DNA of 64,000 nt from Ostrea edulis (Eukaryota), in the NCBI RefSeq assembly GCF_947568905.1, contig NC_079164.1:92318001-92382000 (forward strand), given 5' to 3'. This document shows positions 8,562 through 18,394 of the stretch, in pieces (position 1 is the stretch's first letter; every line of letters starts with the position of its first letter). Both the position numbers and the translations under genes were made by a program. Under the pieces are notes generated by a model, which saw only the letters and a list, made by a program, of their open reading frames with translations, did not search any database and was not told where the DNA came from.

Positions 8562-9034
8562 TTACAGAAGGAATCCCCGTCGAAATCCGCAGTACGAGTT
8601 GGTGGAGGGCGTGGCCTGTGGTTTGACTATTCTGCTGGCATTGAAGGAGGGTGTAACCTGCGGTGTGACCATGCTGCTAGTCTTTGTGGAAGGCGTGGCC
8701 TGCGGTGTGACCATGCTTGCAGCCTTTGTGAAAGGCGTGGTCTGCGTTGTGACCATGCTGCTAGCCTTTGTGGAAGGCATGGTCTGCGGTGTGACCATGC
8801 TGCTAGCCTTTGTGGAAGGCGTGGTCTGCGGTGTGACCATGCTGCTAGCCTTTGTGGAAGGCGTGGTCTGCGGTGTGACCATGCTGCTAGCCTTTGTGGA
8901 AGGCGTGGCCTGCGGTGTGACCATGCTGCTGTGAGTGTTGCAGGTGGTTGACAGTACATCATGTTTGTTGGTTTCAACGTCAATGCTGGTAATTGGTTCT
9001 ATGGAAAATTTTAGATTCATTTCAGTTTCTATAT
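8562..9034 (-). CDS. Possible Ser/Thr/Pro-rich (mucin-like) exon with 14-aa repeats (TKASSMVTPQTTPS)
   Basis: GC-rich 42-bp repeat, open on the minus strand, preceded by a polypyrimidine tract and TAG acceptor (9035-9036). Flanking exons were not resolved. Confidence 0.4.
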
Positions 9035-10122
9035 CTAATATGAGGAAAATGAAGATACACAAAAATGTGAAAGCATATAAAGTTTGTAACCAGGGAAGGG
9101 GCGCAGATGATGGAAAGTTTAAAACAGCATCAAAACAAAACCTTTCAGATTAACAAAAAATCCTAATCTCTTTTTCTAACTTACACGGTCAGAAATTTTC
9201 ACTCCAGTGAAATCCTTGGTATTTGCAACCTACCCCTGAATTTTTTTTGTCTGTGGGCTTGCATTCGTGTGATGATGAAATACATGAAGGTGTATGTCAA
9301 TATGGAACTTTCGGGATGTGCCGGAACGACCGATTATATTTGACGTTTATACATCACGGTCACGTGATAATAACCAATTGTAGGGCAAAGTTGACATTGA
9401 TACAAATGGTGTTTCGCTAGCGGACAGCCCGTAAAGAGCTAAGCGCTGTCCTACGATGACGATCCAAGTCACTATTGGTGCTTAGTACCTTGGAGTAAGT
9501 TAGATGGAAGGAGAACGGCGTATATAGACGCGTATGACTGGATGCAAGGCGTGAAGTTTTACCGACATCCTCAAGATATTCCCTATATTTATTTTCCTCG
9601 CCAACTCACATTATTTAATCAAATGCATTTTCCTATAAAATGGTTGTAGTGATTCCTTACTTTCAAAGATAGCATTTAAGTGCAGGAATTTGATAGTAAA
9701 TGAAGTATCCCATGCTTGTTTACTTAGTTGTTATTGTAATCCGGAAGTGACATGCCCTACAAATTACGTTCAACGCGCGATAAAAGTCAGAGTGGATCCG
9801 TATCTCGAAAGTCCCGTTACGGAATTTAGACTACAACCATGCTCAGAAACATAATAAATCAATTATTACAGTGACACTTTGAAAAAGCAGAGGCTTGACA
9901 ATTATGATATATGCCTCTAATTATTATAAATACCTTGGAATTTTGAGGACACCCATTTGTAAGTCCACTGAACAGACAGGTAAACTAGATGCATCGCAAC
10001 GATCATGATGATTTTAAAGTCGGAACAATCTTATTTCTATACACGTATCCTGTCGATAGGGATAATTTGATTGTGACGTCATAATCAGTGACGAAACAAG
10101 ATATAACATAAATTGTTGCGTC

Positions 10123-10299: not shown

Positions 10300-13082
10300 T
10301 TGTTTATTCTGGTTTGTGGCGATGCAGTAAATCTGATGGCATGGTATTCTGGTCAAGGTAGTCCGGGGTGGATAGGTAACGGGAGCATACCGGGGGTAAG
10401 GCAGTGGGGCAGAAAAACTTGGCATGTACCCAGGTAGGGGATGTGGGGTCGCCGGGTGGCAGGGGTATTCCGGGGGTGACGTTACACGGGGTGTTACGGG
10501 CACCCAAGGATGGAATGCGGGGCCACAGGAGGGACTTGAAACGGACCAAAATTACCAGCTAAATGGAATTGGTTCTGTTGTAGCTTTAGGCCAGGGACAT
10601 GGGACCGGGACAGTTAACCTGCCATAGACACAAATGATTGAGGCCCGGCTAAAGGCATACACTGCACAATTCATGAACCAGTTTGCTCAGCTCAAGAGCA
10701 TGACCGAACAGCTGTTGCAGAATGGTGGAGATGTGAGGTGCAACAGTGCCATATTAGTGGCTTAGCAGTTAGTGTAGGTAACTCTTCGGAGATTTGGGGG
10801 TTTCACCTTTAAATTCAGGTTGGGATAGCTTGTCCGTAGGTCAAGTAGGGGGTTACCCTGCCAGTTATATTGGACGAGCAGGTTGATTGTCCCAGCGTGA
10901 TGGGTGGGTCATGCCCTAAAGTCCTCAGCAGTAATGGGTTGGTACCTATGGGGAACACCTATTACGTTAGCAATACTAGTAGTGGCATTCATGACCAACC
11001 TCAGTCTCCCCATCATTTGCCTATCTGCACAAATGAGTTCCTCTGGGGCCCCGTGTCACCAGTACATCTTGCAGGGTCGGTCAGGTGTTGGTGCATCACA
11101 GTTGAAGCTGCAGACGAGTGAAGTGCCCGTGGGGCATATGGACAATGCTTACAGGGGGATGCATTTTGGTCGCTCGCCAGTCAGACAGGGGATTAGACAT
11201 CATTGCAGGTCAAGGTCGAGATCTCCACTGGTTAGGTATGTCAATACAGAAGACTGTAGGGCTGCTGGTAGGGATGGCTCCAAGTTGTCTAGTCAATGCG
11301 TGTTTTTTGGTCGGGCTTTAGGGATCGGGACTCGAAATAGGTCGGGGCAAGTGCTCCATCAACCCTTAGGTAGCTTCGAAGCTGCAGGGGCGGCAGTTGT
11401 GAGTATATGTCCTGAAATAAGGGTGCCAATGAGGCAGAGTGGTTGTGTGTCGGGGGTAGACAGTGAAAGGTTTGGGTCGACAAGTATGGGTGTTCAGAGG
11501 ACCTGGAATGATTTAAGGGTCAAGGACACGAGGTCGACACAGATCGAGGTGCTACCAGGCACAGGTGATAAGTTATGATGTTGGTCGGAGGGCACTGAGA
11601 CAGGTGTTAGTCACCAGGGTGGTTGGCTGGAGGACACCGGGGATAGTGTCGGTTGCCATAGTGATATGACTTCTGGACATTCCTTGGTTTTGCTGTCGAT
11701 CTCTCAGGGGCTGGGGCTCAAAATAGGTCGAGGCAAGTGCTCCATAAACCCTAAGGGAGCTCCAGTACATGTGAATGGTCGGACCAGTAGTGCTGGACAA
11801 AGGGGTATGGAGTTCTGGTGTCCAGTGGATGGTCAGTTCTCGGATACAGTGGACGAGGATGCATTCGAATGTAGTGTTGGCGAGTTTGGATTGTTACAGG
11901 CGGAAATACTAGTATATGCATGCACTGGGGTTAGTGGTGAGGTATGTGTGGACATACTACATGAGATTAAAAGTCTGCAGGTTTCAGTGGTAGTGCTAGA
12001 GACTGAAGATGCTACAGCCACGATTGAAGCAGTGGCTTATCAGTTCCCAGAGGAGTGTGTCCCCAAAACACCTGACAAATATTGCATTGTTGGTCTGATG
12101 GAGGTTGTGTTGTGTCTGGGTGCCACGGAGAAGACCCTGCGGATGCGGGGTTTGTGGCTCTGTCCGGTTCAGCCTGGTGGTAGTGTTCCTTCTCTGACTG
12201 AGAGGCTTCCTCCTGATAAACATCTAAGCAATGAACGGGATGGGTTTGTTGCTAGTGTCTTCGCGAGTTCCCATTGGTCGTGGGGTGATAGATATGCATC
12301 CCAGGTTCGACTGACAGTGAACCAGGGACAACCCAGGTTTTGTCATCGCAAGGGGGTACGAAAGAAAGTAAATGAATTATGTGAGGGGTGTAAACTCCTC
12401 CATGCTCACAATGCCCCGAAGTGCGGGAAAGGATAGCCTAGTCTGCAGTAATTCAGCCGTTGTTTTGAGGAGACATTTCCTTGTGGTGTTTCTGGATCTG
12501 CCCGCCTGGATGTTGTGATGTCCTTTGGTGTGGTGTGCTATGTCCAAGATGACTCCTGTCCTGTGACGTGCGTGTGGCGATCATGCGTGACATTCCGTGT
12601 GACTCTATGATGTGTCTTTCCTGTTCGTGAATTTCCTGTGATGTGCTGTGTGGTTGTGACATCCTGTGTGACCTTATGAACTGTGAAAATTTAGTTAATT
12701 TTAGGGCACAATGTCGATTATAGAATTAATTTGATCTGTGTATTGCTTTAATGTGTAATGTGTGGTTTTCAACACTGGCCAGAGAGGGATTGGGGATGGT
12801 CATATTATTTGTTCATCCGGAGATCTAACAGGGTAGGATCTTTCTATTTCGGAATTGGGACATTCCTCCTCAAAATAGGAGGGGGTGTAGTGAAATTGAG
12901 TATCTGAATTGTGTCAGTGGCCCGTTCACTTTTACCGGAAGCGGAAACCTCGAATCTCTCTGAGAACAGTTGAATAGGAGAGGTTGTGTGTTGGCTGCCT
13001 AGAACATTTTTGTCATTATCGTTGTGTTTCTGTCGTGTTTTATAGTATATTCGTTTAAATTCCTTAAGTGATCCGGTTTACA
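10300..13082 (+). mobile_element. Possible decayed LTR retrotransposon 3' portion (Gypsy-like) with PPT and LTR start
   Basis: Sharp GC-rich island with broken plus-strand ORFs. Polypurine AAAATAGGAGGGGG (12872-12885) is followed by TGTAGTG at 12886; a possible ...ACA end is near 13082. No RT or integrase motif recognised. Confidence 0.4.
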
Positions 13083-14640: not shown

Positions 14641-15668
14641 GATAGTAAATTCTACAAAATGATGACAAATCGTCGTTTTGCAGTAACTACCCCACCTAGA
14701 AAATTCCCGCAACTAATTTTGTCAAACTCAAAATTATTTTTATCAATTATATTGCGTAAAATTTATATTTACCAAAAAAAATGTAGCGTGAAACTTCATT
14801 TCTGCCATCTTGTTTTGTTGGATTTATTTTTCGTTCATGTTTAATTTCTTCATCACTATGTCTGATTTTTTTTTTCTTCGACAGTATTTGTCAAGTTTAA
14901 TTTGAAAGAATCTTTACATACAACTAAGGATCTCACTGAATTCATCTTTTTACGGTATTCCTTAAAATTGTTAGTATTTATTTCAAAATGCAACTCTTCC
15001 TATTTCATCCTATTTTATCTTCATACCTGATTAAACGTTGTACATGTACAATCAAGCAGATGAAAAATATTCAGTTTCTTTGTCAAAAAGATGATGGATT
15101 AATATGTATACTGAAAACGGAATGCCTAAAATGAAGCCAACAATTGGACTGTCAGAGATATGCCAGTATGTCTCTCTGGTTAAGTTCAGACCAGTAAGGC
15201 TACAATCTCGACAGACACTTCATGTCTCTTGTAATACCTTGTGTCCGCCACTGCTTTTTAGTGAATTTTAAAACAGTTATCTAACAGGGGGAAACACAGC
15301 AGTTTTTGACAATGACAAGTTCGGGTTAGTACGGTTTAGATGTATTGCTTGTAGAATGGTTACCTGCCATAGGGGCTCGTTCAAAATGCATTGATTTTAT
15401 ATAGAGCAGACCAAAATTTTGTAATGCCCACTCAATACGTGAAGTATGGCTAACTATGTAATCAACTGATTAATAAAACTATCAATTAGCAAATACTAAT
15501 AAATTAGTCGAATCGATTCTGTCTCCTTGTGGTTTCTGACACACACAGGCCCTCTCACAAAATAGTGTGCAGATACATATAGTATTTTATGCATCTTAAA
15601 ACATGATGTCTTTATTATAGATTTAAATGTATAAAATCACCATGTAATTTTCATGCATCTATAATTAT

Positions 15669-15713
<45 letters not shown>

Positions 15714-16566
15714 ACTAAATTAATATTTATCCATGCAGTTCAAGCAATTGTCGTGAATAATGAAATGACGTATTTGGTGACGGTGAACATCTTTTATGAC
15801 CAATATTCGTCGTTATGATCTTTTTTATAATTCATTTCAGTGCTGTTTGTCAATTAATCATTATGTTCTGTTCATGTAGATATAAATAATACATTTATAA
15901 TTTACAAGACACAGTTTAATGGATTACAAATTTTGATGCAGCATAGTAATTACTGTTTCATGCTTTGTTTGAAGTAAGATATAATGCGTACATTTTGTTA
16001 AACCAATTTAAAACAAACATAAATAATTTATATTCTGTTGAATTTAAAAATACACATAAGCCCAATTCAACAAGACTGTCTGTCAAAATAGGCCATTTTA
16101 TGTCAGTTTGGTTGACACAATCCACCACAAATAACAAAATTAATTCAACACATACAGGTGGAATTGTAATCTTGCGTTCTTCAAGACAGGAAGCACATTT
16201 CTAGTGTTTTCTTGAAGAGAGTAGCTTCTTGGCAGTTGGCTACTGATGTGTCAATAAACTTGTAGCACTATATAGCACATAGTCGAAAATAAGTAAAACT
16301 TATATCATTCAAAATATTGTGAAGGATCCTTTCCCCGTCCTGCTGTAAATGGACAGAAACCAAGTGGAGTAAGTCACCTCGCTGTCAGGAGCCCCCTTAT
16401 TGCTGTGGTGTATCACACTACAGGCCACATATCATGTGATACCACTGTTTAAAACGATTTTGTCCCTCGTTTTAGCGATGTGGGTTTTGTGTGTGTGTGT
16501 ATTGCTCGAGATGCCATTGAATATCTCCAACTCTTGATACATCATCGAATGAATTAAATATTTTCT

Positions 16567-17307
16567 TCAACTGCTGTCTGTAGATCCTCGCATGCACCTC
16601 AGTTCTCTGCAATATGCTCGCCACTCTCCTTGCAAATTGTCACAGATTCGACATAAAGCGTCTGATAAAAACACATGGAATGTGTAGTTTCTATCTTTGG
16701 TAGGGGTCTTCTTCTTTGCACTTTGATCAGCGATCTTAGCGTTTGTGTTCTTTATCAAAGAATCACTTCGGTCATTCGATTTTTCTAATTTTCTCCTGAT
16801 CACAGGTTTTTTTGGGGTCCTTCTCAGGGGAGGTAATCGAGACAGTAACGCCTTGCCGTACCTCGACCTTAGGCTTGCGGATGGTCCCTTAGGATGCCCT
16901 CTCCTAGCATTCCACTGCCTGGAGGCGGGTGGAAGAATCCGCTTGGAATTGTTATATGTCCTACGTGATGATGACTGATTAGGAATCAGTCTTAGCTGTG
17001 AAGAACTTGGGGAAATTTGGCGGCGTTCTGCTGAGAACAAATAAATTTATGTTACATTCTCGTCTTCAGAGGTTATGCAAGGTTGAATTGCATCTTTATA
17101 GTATTTTTATTACTGACATAAACAAGGTATTTTTGTGCCGCTTACAGTATATGAAATAATCTGAAATTCCACACCATTATCAATATTTCTTCAGAATTAA
17201 TTATTCTTACCTCGCTTAGTGTTCCGTGCAATGTGAAATCCAGAGGCGATGTTCCCAATCCAAATAAAGCACAAGAACACAATACTGGAATACTTGTAAA
17301 AATCCAT
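16567..17307 (-). CDS. Secreted basic prepropeptide-like protein, 186 aa, C-terminal C-x2-C-x10-C-x4-C motif
   Basis: Exon 1 17307-17211 (MDFYKYSSIVFLCFIWIGNIASGFHIARNTKR, signal-peptide-like), GTAAGA donor, 180-bp intron, TTGTTCTCAG acceptor, exon 2 17030-16567. The phase-1 junction joins in frame. Confidence 0.7.
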
Positions 17308-18394
17308 GTCGGATAAAACAAATCATGAACTGTTTCAACAGAGGTCCTCACATCGCTCTTTTAAGAAGAAGAAAAAGTCATTTCCCTGCACTTTGATACG
17401 CCGGGGAAAAAAAGGTCGAAGTAGCGACAACTGCACCTAAGTTTTTATGCTCTTTGTCCGTTAAATACTGACACCTTTATCGTGGACAGAGGTTCAAAGA
17501 CAGGTGATTTCTGCGGCCTCTCACAGTTCGACAGCTATACACTAGAGTAGATCATTGGCCAACATGTTCTTCTTAGTCACTGCCTTATTTCGGTTTACCT
17601 ACTTCTATTTATATAAGATGAAAGGTAAATCGTCAAATATAAGCCTAGGCGCTTCTAAACATTTTACAATTTTATTAATGAATTGCACATTAAAATTTGA
17701 GGCACGCTTTCTGTTATCTGAATCGTAGACGTTCATTGGTGGTATTTCCTCAAGGGTTGCGAAATAAGACGTCCGTGAAATTTATTGCGCACAGTGAAAT
17801 ATTACGCAAACAGCTGTGTATTTAACTTGTCCAAAAAAGAAAAAAAAAGTTTGTTGATTTGTTTTGATTTGTTTTACATTTACAATTTAATTAGGGAATT
17901 TATTTTTATTTCTGAGGAACTGATACTGACGTATCGAGACGTACATTAAACTGACTCATGCCAGACACGATTATTTTCTTTATTTTTCTCTGTGTTTTGC
18001 TATATATCGCAGTGTTTTGCTATATATCGCAAATGATATTCGAATGAATTATATGATAGTTGAAATCGATACTTTATTTCATTGATCACGTGTGTGCGTA
18101 TGGAACATCTGCTTTAACATGAATCCGATGTACACGTTACATTTGGGAATTACTCTTTGTTTTCTTTGTACGTAACTTTCAAAGAAATTAAATTTTTCTG
18201 TCGAAAACCTTTTATATTATTCTTGTTATCACTGGGTATTTTCTTCTAATTTTAAAAATTCTTATATGATTTATTTCTGTAAGTTTAAGAACTGTGGAAT
18301 AGATCCCCTTCACTGTTAATGATATACAATATATTATACACAACACGTCTATCTTCAGATAACTCTGCTCATTTCAGCCCCTTGCATCAGGCCT

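What the first reader, a model, noticed from the sequence alone, without database searches (positions are those of the whole stretch)
16567..17307. Hidden two-exon gene for a secreted basic precursor with a 4-Cys C-terminal peptide
Only splicing reveals it. A signal peptide is followed by KR, then a K/R/P/S-rich region with many dibasic sites, then ...NYTFHVFLSDALCRICDNLQGEWRAYCRELRCMRGSTDSS. The CxxC-x10-C-x4-C spacing loosely recalls the CHH/ITP core but has 4 rather than 6 Cys, and I cannot assign it to a family. It is a candidate novel neuropeptide, hormone or defence peptide precursor (inference).
Basis: partly seen in the sequence, partly recalled or inferred. Interest (0 to 1): 0.7.

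Follow-up and report, generated by a model that had tools for sequence, protein, structure and literature searches.

The report
Oyster-only secreted basic Cys-peptide gene
This is a real two-exon flat-oyster gene, already listed in RefSeq as an uncharacterized protein and found only in true oysters; it probably encodes a secreted, very basic protein ending in a small two-disulfide helical hairpin whose function is untested.

Summary
On the minus strand, exon 1 (17307-17211) and exon 2 (17030-16567) are joined across a 180-nt GT-AG, phase-1 intron. They encode a 186-aa protein with a signal-peptide-like N-terminus, a 123-aa region of pI 12, and a 40-aa C-terminus with C-x2-C-x10-C-x4-C.

The gene is not hidden. 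The model is letter for letter RefSeq XP_056022079.1, Ostrea edulis LOC130054966 isoform X1. Isoform X2 uses the second AG of a cag|cag tandem acceptor.

Uncharacterized orthologues with the same intron are annotated in Crassostrea virginica, Magallana gigas, M. angulata, Saccostrea echinata and S. cucullata. In an unnamed species close to Magallana, transcript contigs laid on a genomic contig prove the splice and both acceptor forms. dN/dS is about 0.15 along the whole length, and the Cys domain is the best conserved part.

An exhaustive profile search of 1.84 billion proteins found only oysters. Pfam is blank. The CHH/ITP and eclosion-hormone models miss the locus. The oyster's own four-Cys CHH-like gene (family published 2023, noted earlier by this scan elsewhere in this genome) shows no homology.

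The neuropeptide, hormone or defence reading remains an inference. No tissue expression, read-level splice evidence in O. edulis or peptide evidence could be obtained.

The parts
17211..17307 (-). Exon 1 coding part: ATG at 17307, 32 codons plus 1 base. It encodes the signal-peptide-like segment and FHIARNTKR.
   Evidence: Identical to the N-terminus of RefSeq protein P0009. The Kozak context is gacATGG.
17239..17307 (-). Predicted signal peptide, residues 1-23 (MDFYKYSSIVFLCFIWIGNIASG), with predicted cleavage after A-S-G and before the invariant FH.
   Evidence: The hydrophobic core is 12-13 residues, and [AC][SA]G|FH is conserved in all orthologues. This is rule-based only; SignalP was not available.
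17031..17210 (-). Intron of 180 nt, GT-AG, phase 1.
   Evidence: The same position and phase occur in C. virginica (143 nt), S. echinata (365 nt) and S. cucullata (321 nt). In an unnamed species close to Magallana, its removal is shown by transcript contigs laid on a genomic contig.
17028..17033 (-). Tandem (NAGNAG) acceptor cag|cag. The proximal AG gives isoform X1 (186 aa, with Ala33). The distal AG gives X2 (185 aa).
   Evidence: P0009 and P0010 differ only by Ala33. C. virginica has cag|tag and its X1/X2 forms differ by Val. Both forms are seen in transcript contigs of the Magallana-like species.
16567..17030 (-). Exon 2 coding part, including the TGA stop at 16567-16569.
16690..17030 (-). 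Basic region, predicted to be mostly disordered. With the end of exon 1 it makes 123 aa with net charge +28 and pI 12. It ends in the invariant K-D-R (16698-16690).
   Evidence: charge, pI. (AlphaFold pLDDT mostly 41-62, one short helix). (invariant SRQWN.R, RR, PV.R.K, KDR).
16570..16689 (-). C-terminal 40-aa Cys domain NYTFH...CRICDNLQGEWRAYCRELRC...DSS. The Cys codons are at 16653-16651, 16644-16642, 16611-16609 and 16596-16594. It is predicted to be a helix-loop-helix.
   Evidence: the four Cys, D, L, Q, G, E, W, R invariant. (helices, pLDDT 72-88). (lowest pN of the protein).
17308..17800 (-). Conserved 5' leader and/or promoter. It contains CACCTG at 17506-17501, GATAAAGG at 17481-17474, the TATA-like CATAAAAAC at 17449-17441, and a minimal ATG-TGA upstream ORF at 17353-17348.
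   Evidence: About 70% identity to Saccostrea, C. virginica and the Magallana-like species although synonymous sites are saturated. Transcript contigs of the Magallana-like species are colinear with its genome for 351-557 nt upstream of the ATG.
15616..16566 (-). Probable 3' UTR. Poly(A) signals lie at 15920 (ATTAAA) and 15616 (AATAAA). Patches are conserved at 16373-16221 and 15840-15748.
   Evidence: The true 3' end was not determined.

Best explanation
LOC130054966 of Ostrea edulis is a single-copy gene restricted to true oysters (Ostreidae), and it encodes a secreted prepro-protein.

Shown:
- The gene structure, its conservation and its purifying selection.
- Splicing and tandem-acceptor use, in a close relative.
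- Absence of relatives outside oysters at HMMER sensitivity.

Inferred:
- The first 23 residues act as a cleavable signal peptide.
- The roughly 120-aa Arg/Lys/Ser-rich middle is a disordered pro-region, though itself under constraint.
- The 39-41-aa C-terminal segment folds into a helix-loop-helix stapled by two disulfides, most simply nested (Cys1-Cys4 and Cys2-Cys3). It is released by a proprotein convertase at the invariant K-D-R, which has Lys at P6-P8, to act outside the cell as a signalling peptide. This follows the usual layout of signal, pro-region and C-terminal disulfide peptide.
For: - Gene model. Searches agree with RefSeq P0009/P0010.
- Orthologues. Six annotated species plus unnamed ones share the phase-1 intron. 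The neighbouring sugar-transporter/astacin genes are also shared with C. virginica.
- Splicing. Transcript versus genome comparison in the Magallana-like species. Spliced contigs come from at least 4 runs in two accession series.
- Selection. dN/dS is 0.11-0.26 overall and 0.15 for the unsaturated Saccostrea pair. In pairs not involving O. edulis, the Cys domain has about half or less of the non-synonymous divergence of the basic region, for example 0.099 against 0.339. This is the pattern expected of a mature peptide against a spacer.
- Cysteines. There are exactly four in the predicted mature protein of the five species analysed.
- Fold. The C-terminal helix-loop-helix has pLDDT 72-88.
- Processing site. 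KDR directly before the invariant YTFH is conserved in eight sequences.
- Copy number. One copy, with at most one remote paralogue in the genome. Low copy number and low dN/dS fit an endogenous signal better than a fast-evolving immune or gamete protein.
Against: - No tissue expression data could be obtained, and no junction reads in O. edulis.
- No spliced O. edulis contig is in the protein cluster. All O. edulis Logan members are unspliced.
- The gene is absent from the M. gigas visceral-ganglia neuropeptide survey and the 2014 oyster neuropeptide survey, in both text and held supplements.
- K-D-R is not a classical dibasic or furin site.
- One divergent orthologue (P0004) lacks KDR and has a fifth Cys.
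- A pro-region with net charge +20 to +28 that is itself conserved is unusual for a mere spacer.
- No Gly for amidation and no repeated peptide copies are present.
- Disulfide pairing and secretion were not tested.
Confidence: 0.4

Rival explanations
1. The protein is secreted but works unprocessed. The polycationic region binds polyanions such as sulphated glycans, microbial surfaces, nucleic acids, or shell or mucus matrix. The protein would then be a defence or matrix protein, with the disulfide hairpin serving as a stabilising or membrane-active module.
For: The basic region carries net charge +20 to +28 at pI 12. It is itself under purifying selection, with invariant motifs rather than conserved cleavage sites. 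The only fold-search rows with any theme are saposins, which are disulfide-stapled, membrane-active helical proteins, at non-significant E-values of 3-10.
Against: The gene is single copy with low dN/dS and conserved neighbours. By my own knowledge, bivalve antimicrobial genes are usually multi-copy and fast evolving. The Cys domain is neutral to acidic, pI 4.9-6.7, which is the reverse of cationic antimicrobial peptides. The saposin matches are not significant.
Confidence: 0.3
2. The protein is not secreted. The N-terminal hydrophobic segment is an uncleaved signal anchor that leaves the basic tail in the cytosol, in keeping with the positive-inside rule. The C-x2-C...C-x4-C motif would then be a Cys4 zinc knuckle of a nucleic-acid-binding protein.
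For: The uncharged N-terminal run is 16-19 residues long and the 19-residue hydropathy maximum is 1.4-2.1, which is borderline for a membrane span. The flank after it is much more positive than the flank before it. The weak sub-threshold Pfam rows are both zinc modules: CEBP_ZZ at E 0.03, and Ribosomal_L40e for the candidate paralogue.
Against: The hydrophobic core is short, contains Asn in Saccostrea, and is followed by a conserved small-x-small [AC][SA]G|FH cleavage-type motif. Apart from O. edulis, the first 7-9 residues after the predicted cut are uncharged. AlphaFold places both Cys pairs in helices, not knuckles. The Pfam scores (about 15 bits) are far below the cut-offs (23 and 29.8 bits).
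Confidence: 0.1
3. The Cys domain is a very divergent, shortened member of the CHH/ITP/eclosion-hormone superfamily, for example an offshoot of the spiralian four-Cys CHH-like peptides.
For: It shares C-x2-C followed by L/G a few residues on and a third Cys 10-11 residues later. Spiralian CHH-like peptides read C-x2-C-x11-C-x11-C. Both genes place an intron just after the signal peptide.
Against: PF01147 and PF04736 do not hit the locus at E<=10 in this genome. hhalign of the domain profile against the oyster's own CHH-like peptide gives probability 0.9% over 13 columns, and BLASTP gives nothing. The intron phase is 1, not 2. The peptide sits after a 120-aa basic region, not directly after the signal peptide. 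It has two helices, not three. The fourth Cys is 4 residues on, not 11. By the textbook CHH pairing (C1-C5, C2-C4, C3-C6; my own knowledge), the spacing here would keep C2, C3, C4 and C5 and so leave two Cys without their partners. No CHH-family structure appears in the fold searches.
Confidence: 0.05
4. It is a chance ORF or an annotation artefact, not a functional gene.
Against: Orthologues occur in four genera with a shared intron, neighbouring genes shared with C. virginica, dN/dS of about 0.15 and spliced transcripts in relatives.
Confidence: 0.01

Closest known systems
Spiralian four-Cys CHH-like peptides ('CHH DREP', Koch et al. 2023, PMC10501145). The O. edulis copy is at G000:C6:46490876-46490959.
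   Same: Both are small two-exon genes with an intron just behind the signal peptide. Both encode a helical peptide with four Cys beginning with C-x2-C. Both were annotated only as 'uncharacterized' in molluscs.
   Different: - The CHH DREP peptide follows the signal peptide directly, is about 50-70 aa with three helices, and is acidic.
- Its spacing is C-x2-C-x11-C-x11-C and its intron is phase 2.
- Here there is a 120-aa basic region first, then 40 aa with two helices, x10 and x4 spacing, and a phase-1 intron.
- No profile similarity was found.
Crustacean hyperglycaemic hormone / ion transport peptide family (Pfam PF01147) and eclosion hormone (PF04736)
   Same: A short local resemblance around C-x2-C-x-N-L / C-x2-C-x4-G-x-W, and helical disulfide-rich secreted peptides.
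   Different: Those families have six Cys and three disulfides; this one has four. Neither HMM hits the locus. Oysters have a separate canonical eclosion-hormone precursor with six Cys per ligand (PMC8398477).
Generic 'signal - pro-region - C-terminal disulfide peptide' precursors (conotoxins, PTTH/Trunk, hepcidin-type), recalled from my own knowledge
   Same: The order of parts, the mature Cys peptide at the extreme C-terminus preceded by a basic residue, and the peptide being better conserved than the pro-region.
   Different: The pro-region here is extremely basic and itself conserved. The putative site is K-D-R rather than KR, RR or RxxR. There is no sequence relation to any of those families.
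Saposin-like proteins
   Same: A helix carrying C-x2-C is stapled to a later helix carrying C-x4/5-C. These are the weak top rows in Foldseek.
   Different: Saposins have 4-5 helices, six Cys and about 80 aa. The matches here have E 3-10 over 33-36 columns and are not significant. This is an analogy of geometry only.

Membership tests
CHH/ITP/MIH superfamily (PF01147) | Match to the family HMM | tested here: not met
   hmmscan of the exon-2 product and of P0009 at E<=10 lists no PF01147 row. A PF01147 search of the whole genome at E<=10 gives 19 places, none at this locus.
CHH/ITP/MIH superfamily (PF01147) | Six conserved Cys forming three disulfides (C1-C5, C2-C4, C3-C6) | tested here: not met
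   The mature protein has four Cys in the five species analysed. The spacing x2/x10/x4 would correspond to C2-C5 and leave two Cys without partners. The connectivity is from my own knowledge of the family.
Spiralian CHH DREP (Koch et al. 2023) | Peptide directly after the signal peptide, spacing C-x2-C-x11-C-x11-C, three helices | tested here: not met
   Published sequences and the O. edulis copy were compared with this protein. Position, spacing and helix number all differ.
Spiralian CHH DREP (Koch et al. 2023) | [quoted passage not shown] | tested here: not met
   The intron here is phase 1 in four genomes. The published structures are phase 2.
Spiralian CHH DREP (Koch et al. 2023) | Detectable sequence or profile similarity to a family member | tested here: not met
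   hhalign gives probability 0.9% over 13 columns. BLASTP finds no alignment at E<=100. Only one family member, reachable by reference, was used; a full family profile was not built.
Eclosion hormone (PF04736) | Match to the family HMM; six Cys | tested here: not met
   No row. The genome search gives 7 weak places, none at this locus. The protein has four Cys.
Neuropeptide / peptide-hormone precursor (functional class) | Cleavable signal peptide | tested here: inconclusive
   Rule-based only: a short hydrophobic core and a conserved A/C-S/A-G|FH motif. No SignalP was available.
Neuropeptide / peptide-hormone precursor (functional class) | Conserved convertase sites flanking the conserved peptide | tested here: inconclusive
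   KDR and [LM]RR are invariant in eight sequences. KDR is non-canonical, P0004 lacks both sites, and most other dibasic sites shift between species.
Neuropeptide / peptide-hormone precursor (functional class) | Expression in neural or endocrine tissue; the peptide detected | not testable with these tools
The gene is not listed in the oyster neuropeptide surveys searched.
Cys4 zinc knuckle / ZZ-type modules | Match to a zinc-module HMM above its cut-off | tested here: not met
   CEBP_ZZ scores 14.6-15 bits against a cut-off of 29.8.

The most novel reading that the evidence does not exclude
The C-terminal 39-41-aa two-disulfide helix-loop-helix is a previously undescribed peptide hormone or pheromone. 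It would have arisen in the oyster lineage, or diverged there beyond recognition, and be released from an unusually polycationic pro-protein that may tether or chaperone it. One remote paralogue in the same chromosome-scale sequence (a 133-aa ORF at G000:C1:79.2 Mb with a signal peptide and VYLADMICGSCDRLVGPVRRQNCRKKLC) would make it a small new peptide family.
Probability: 0.25. Interest if true: 0.6.

Novelty: new variant of a known kind. Interest (0 to 1): 0.35.

Why it matters
Oysters are ecologically and commercially important, and their peptide signalling is only partly catalogued. A conserved, single-copy, oyster-restricted secreted protein with a compact disulfide-stapled C-terminal peptide is a concrete, cheaply testable candidate for a lineage-specific hormone, pheromone or defence factor. 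The peptide is small enough to synthesise. If it proves to be only a matrix-binding or structural protein, the value is modest: one more annotated orphan gene given a domain description. It is also a clean example of a tandem (NAGNAG) acceptor kept across oyster genera.

Tried and rejected
There is therefore no read-level evidence in O. edulis. Two runs held shares of 0.82-0.83 of the query words, which equals 1 minus the intron fraction.
- Family scans. Pfam on exon 2, on the full protein and on the candidate paralogue gave only sub-threshold zinc-module rows.
- ESM Atlas by features. The best score was 0.78, which is noise.
- PDB by sequence. Only compositional stathmin rows, E >= 0.01.
- Fold searches. 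Foldseek and VIA-align on both models returned generic helical hairpins with Z <= 5.7 and E >= 2. The tool returns no model coordinates, so disulfide geometry could not be inspected.
- PF01147 hit. A 28.6-bit hit on C3:55408185 looked like an oyster CHH gene but is a tandem-repeat artefact with stops.
- Paper searches. Searches for all LOC and XP identifiers and for six peptide motifs returned no papers. The supplements of three relevant papers hold no matching sequence.
- Paralogue search. A profile of the Cys domain found only the one weak candidate already seen. Its only database twin is O. edulis itself, so its reality is open.
- CHH-like family profile. I located the O. edulis copy by a degenerate DNA pattern and used it by reference.
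- Joined model. I did not submit a hand-joined spliced model. Searches were done exon by exon or with database proteins.

Full report
**1. What is in the sequence**

On the minus strand an ATG at 17307 opens 32 codons, MDFYKYSSIVFLCFIWIGNIASGFHIARNTKR. These are followed by one further base and a GTAAGA donor at 17210. After 180 nt comes the acceptor ttgttctcag| (AG at 17032-17031). A 153-codon frame then runs from 17028 to the TGA at 16569-16567. The split codon g|ca gives Ala, so the intron is phase 1.

Exon 2 alone is a 157-codon ORF from an in-intron TTG, the longest ORF for kilobases around. Splicing adds the signal peptide rather than revealing the gene. The joined product was returned by the database.

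**2. Identity**

A word search with exon 2 and the cluster look-up show that the window is Ostrea edulis. Isoform X2 (P0010, 185 aa) lacks Ala33. That corresponds to use of the second AG in the cag|cag tandem acceptor at 17033-17028.

The gene is therefore annotated, not hidden, but it has no name or function. No paper in the library mentions any of its identifiers or motifs.

**3. Relatives**

Orthologues annotated as uncharacterized proteins exist in six species:
- Ostrea edulis (LOC130054966)
- Crassostrea virginica (LOC111137081, X1/X2)
- Magallana gigas (LOC105334484)
- M. angulata (LOC128189142)
- Saccostrea echinata (LOC133206022)
- S. cucullata (LOC134252012)

There are also unnamed species in Logan and JGI contigs (P0005, P0049, P0004).

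An exhaustive HMMER profile search of 1.84 billion representative proteins found 8 proteins at E<=0.001. Seven are these oyster proteins. The eighth is a 691-aa DDE transposase-like protein at E 1.8e-4 with a low-complexity match. A search restricted to the Cys domain again returned only oysters. Within the O. edulis genome the gene is single copy.

In C. virginica the neighbouring gene model carries sugar-transporter and astacin domains. Earlier notes of this scan place a GLUT gene and a protease gene in this window, so the same neighbours appear to be shared.

**4. Proof that it is a spliced, constrained gene**

The genomes of O. edulis, C. virginica, S. echinata and S. cucullata all have a GT-AG phase-1 intron at the homologous codon. 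A further divergent species also has an intact exon 1 with donor and acceptor.

For the P0005 species, which is close to Magallana, a genomic contig (L019) and four transcript contigs could be compared. The transcripts come from at least four runs in two accession series. They lack a 162-165-nt intron. One joins GACGAG|CAGTTATACGA and three join GACGAG|TTATACGA, so both AGs of the ttag|cag acceptor are used. C. virginica has cag|tag and annotated X1/X2 forms differing by one Val. Saccostrea has a single AG.

Nei-Gojobori estimates give dN/dS of 0.15 for the unsaturated S. echinata / S. cucullata pair:

| Region | dN/dS (Saccostrea pair) |
|---|---|
| Whole protein | 0.15 |
| Basic region | 0.16 |
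| Cys domain | 0.12 |

In the saturated pairs the value is 0.11-0.26. In pairs not involving O. edulis, non-synonymous divergence in the Cys domain is about half or less of that in the basic region, for example 0.099 against 0.339 and 0.135 against 0.341. For O. edulis pairs the gap is smaller, 0.139-0.213 against 0.231-0.340.

What I could not get is read-level evidence in O. edulis itself. I kept those places out of every later search. All O. edulis Logan ORFs in the cluster are unspliced.

**5. Anatomy of the protein**

- **Residues 1-23.** A short hydrophobic core is followed by [AC][SA]G and the invariant FH. This reads as a cleavable signal peptide by the (-3,-1) rule, but it was not run through SignalP.
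- **Residues 24-146.** This region has pI 12 and net charge +28, or +22 to +26 in the other species. It contains 13-16% Arg and 11-14% Ser. AlphaFold predicts it as unstructured apart from one short helix. It is nevertheless constrained: SRQWN.R, Y..AL, RR, PV.R.K and KDR are invariant in eight sequences. Most dibasic sites, including the KR after the signal peptide, are not positionally conserved.
- **Residues 147-186.** This segment runs [DN]YTFH.V.L.D..C..CD.LQGEWR..CRE.RC.R..D.S. It is 39-41 aa with pI 4.9-6.7 and holds the only four Cys of the mature protein. It is predicted as helix-loop-helix with pLDDT 72-88, both in the full model and in the domain-only model.

**6. Comparison with known families**

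Pfam gives only sub-threshold zinc-module rows.

- PF01147 and PF04736 (eclosion hormone) do not hit the locus at E<=10 in a search of the whole genome.
I traced this to Koch et al. 2023 (PMC10501145). Its published sequences and gene structures show a peptide lying directly behind the signal peptide, spacing C-x2-C-x11-C-x11-C, three helices and a phase-2 intron.
- I located the O. edulis copy with a degenerate pattern at G000:C6:46490876-46490959 and compared it by reference. hhalign gave probability 0.9% over 13 columns, and BLASTP gave nothing.
- The spacing here (x2, x10, x4) would correspond to CHH Cys 2-5. By the textbook pairing, which is my own knowledge, that would leave two Cys without partners.

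So the resemblance is superficial. Fold searches returned only generic helical hairpins, with non-significant saposin rows on top.

**7. Reading**

The safest statement is that this is a conserved orphan gene of true oysters for a secreted protein whose functional core is a two-disulfide helical hairpin.

I favour, at about 0.4, the classical prepro-peptide mechanism with release at K-D-R. Four points support it:
- The order of parts.
- The better conservation of the C-terminal peptide.
- The single copy number.
- The low dN/dS, which fits an endogenous signal better than an immune or gamete-recognition protein.

Four points count against it:
- The non-canonical cleavage site.
- The divergent orthologue that lacks KDR.
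- The conserved polycationic 'pro-region'.
- Absence from the two oyster neuropeptide surveys I could search.

The rivals are an unprocessed polyanion-binding defence or matrix protein (0.3), a signal-anchored cytosolic zinc-knuckle protein (0.1), and a divergent CHH relative (0.05).

**8. Verdict**

Novelty is moderate. The family is undescribed in the literature I could search, though annotated as uncharacterized in RefSeq. It is of a familiar architectural kind, and its function remains open.

Noticed in passing
window 17028-17033 (-); L004, L019: The cag|cag tandem (NAGNAG) acceptor, which adds or drops one residue right after the signal-peptide exon, is kept in Ostrea, C. virginica (cag|tag) and the Magallana-like species (tag|cag, both forms seen in transcripts). 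It is absent in Saccostrea.
   Followed up: yes
window 17308-17800 (-): The 500 nt upstream of the ATG are about 70% identical across oyster genera although synonymous sites are saturated. There is a near-invariant block, AAATCACCTGTCTTTGAACCTCTGTCCACGATAAAGGTGTCAG (17510-17468), then CATAAAAAC and TGCAGTTGTCGC. Transcripts of the Magallana-like species include this stretch, so it is at least partly a long 5' leader with several upstream ATGs, including an ATG-TGA start-stop at 17353-17348 that is kept in three of five species.
   Followed up: partly
G000:C1:79215227-79215328 (-), L003 1465-1866: A 133-codon single-exon ORF has a signal-peptide-like start and the C-terminal motif VYLADMICGSCDRLVGPVRRQNCRKKLC (C-x2-C-x11-C-x4-C). 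It is a possible remote paralogue: genome-wide E 0.08, pairwise E 0.001. Its only database twin is a Logan ORF 98% identical to it, presumably also O. edulis.
   Followed up: partly
G000:C6:46490876-46490959 (+), L024 1459-1608: Exon 2 of the O. edulis four-Cys CHH-like peptide gene (NLPEGQSLRMFLEVCEACGELYGSAFTHFCLIERKHETYFNCLLAMGFKR).
   Followed up: partly
G000:C3:55408185-55408373 (+), L022 1650-1910: The only PF01147 (CHH) hit above the cut-off in this genome is a tandem repeat (LNFIHHQKLYTVC...) with stops. It is a false positive.
   Followed up: yes
P0001, P0006-P0008, P0050, P0052, P0053: Many database ORF calls for this gene run through the TGA stop as W, or start inside the intron or in the 5' leader. 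This gives 'proteins' of 233-331 aa. They are gene-caller artefacts, not isoforms.
   Followed up: yes
P0068 versus P0069 (M. gigas): Two M. gigas versions differ by a six-residue indel (IDKLSS) in the basic region, giving 175 against 181 aa. This is a length difference inside the putative pro-region; I did not establish whether they are alleles or successive annotation versions.
   Followed up: no
L014 / L015 (P0004; JGI metagenome 3300045951 and SRR35385998): A divergent orthologue from an unnamed oyster has both exons intact. Its DNA is about 70% identical to the window, and the match runs through the intron. It lacks the KDR and RR sites, has a fifth Cys, and has a longer tail.
   Followed up: partly
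window 8562-9062 (-) and 10904-12436 (+): One ORF consists of Ser/Thr/Pro-rich tandem repeats (SSMVTPQTTPSTKA). Two long ORFs lie in a GC-rich island (0.48 against 0.33). None has a Pfam match.
   Followed up: partly
   Followed up: no
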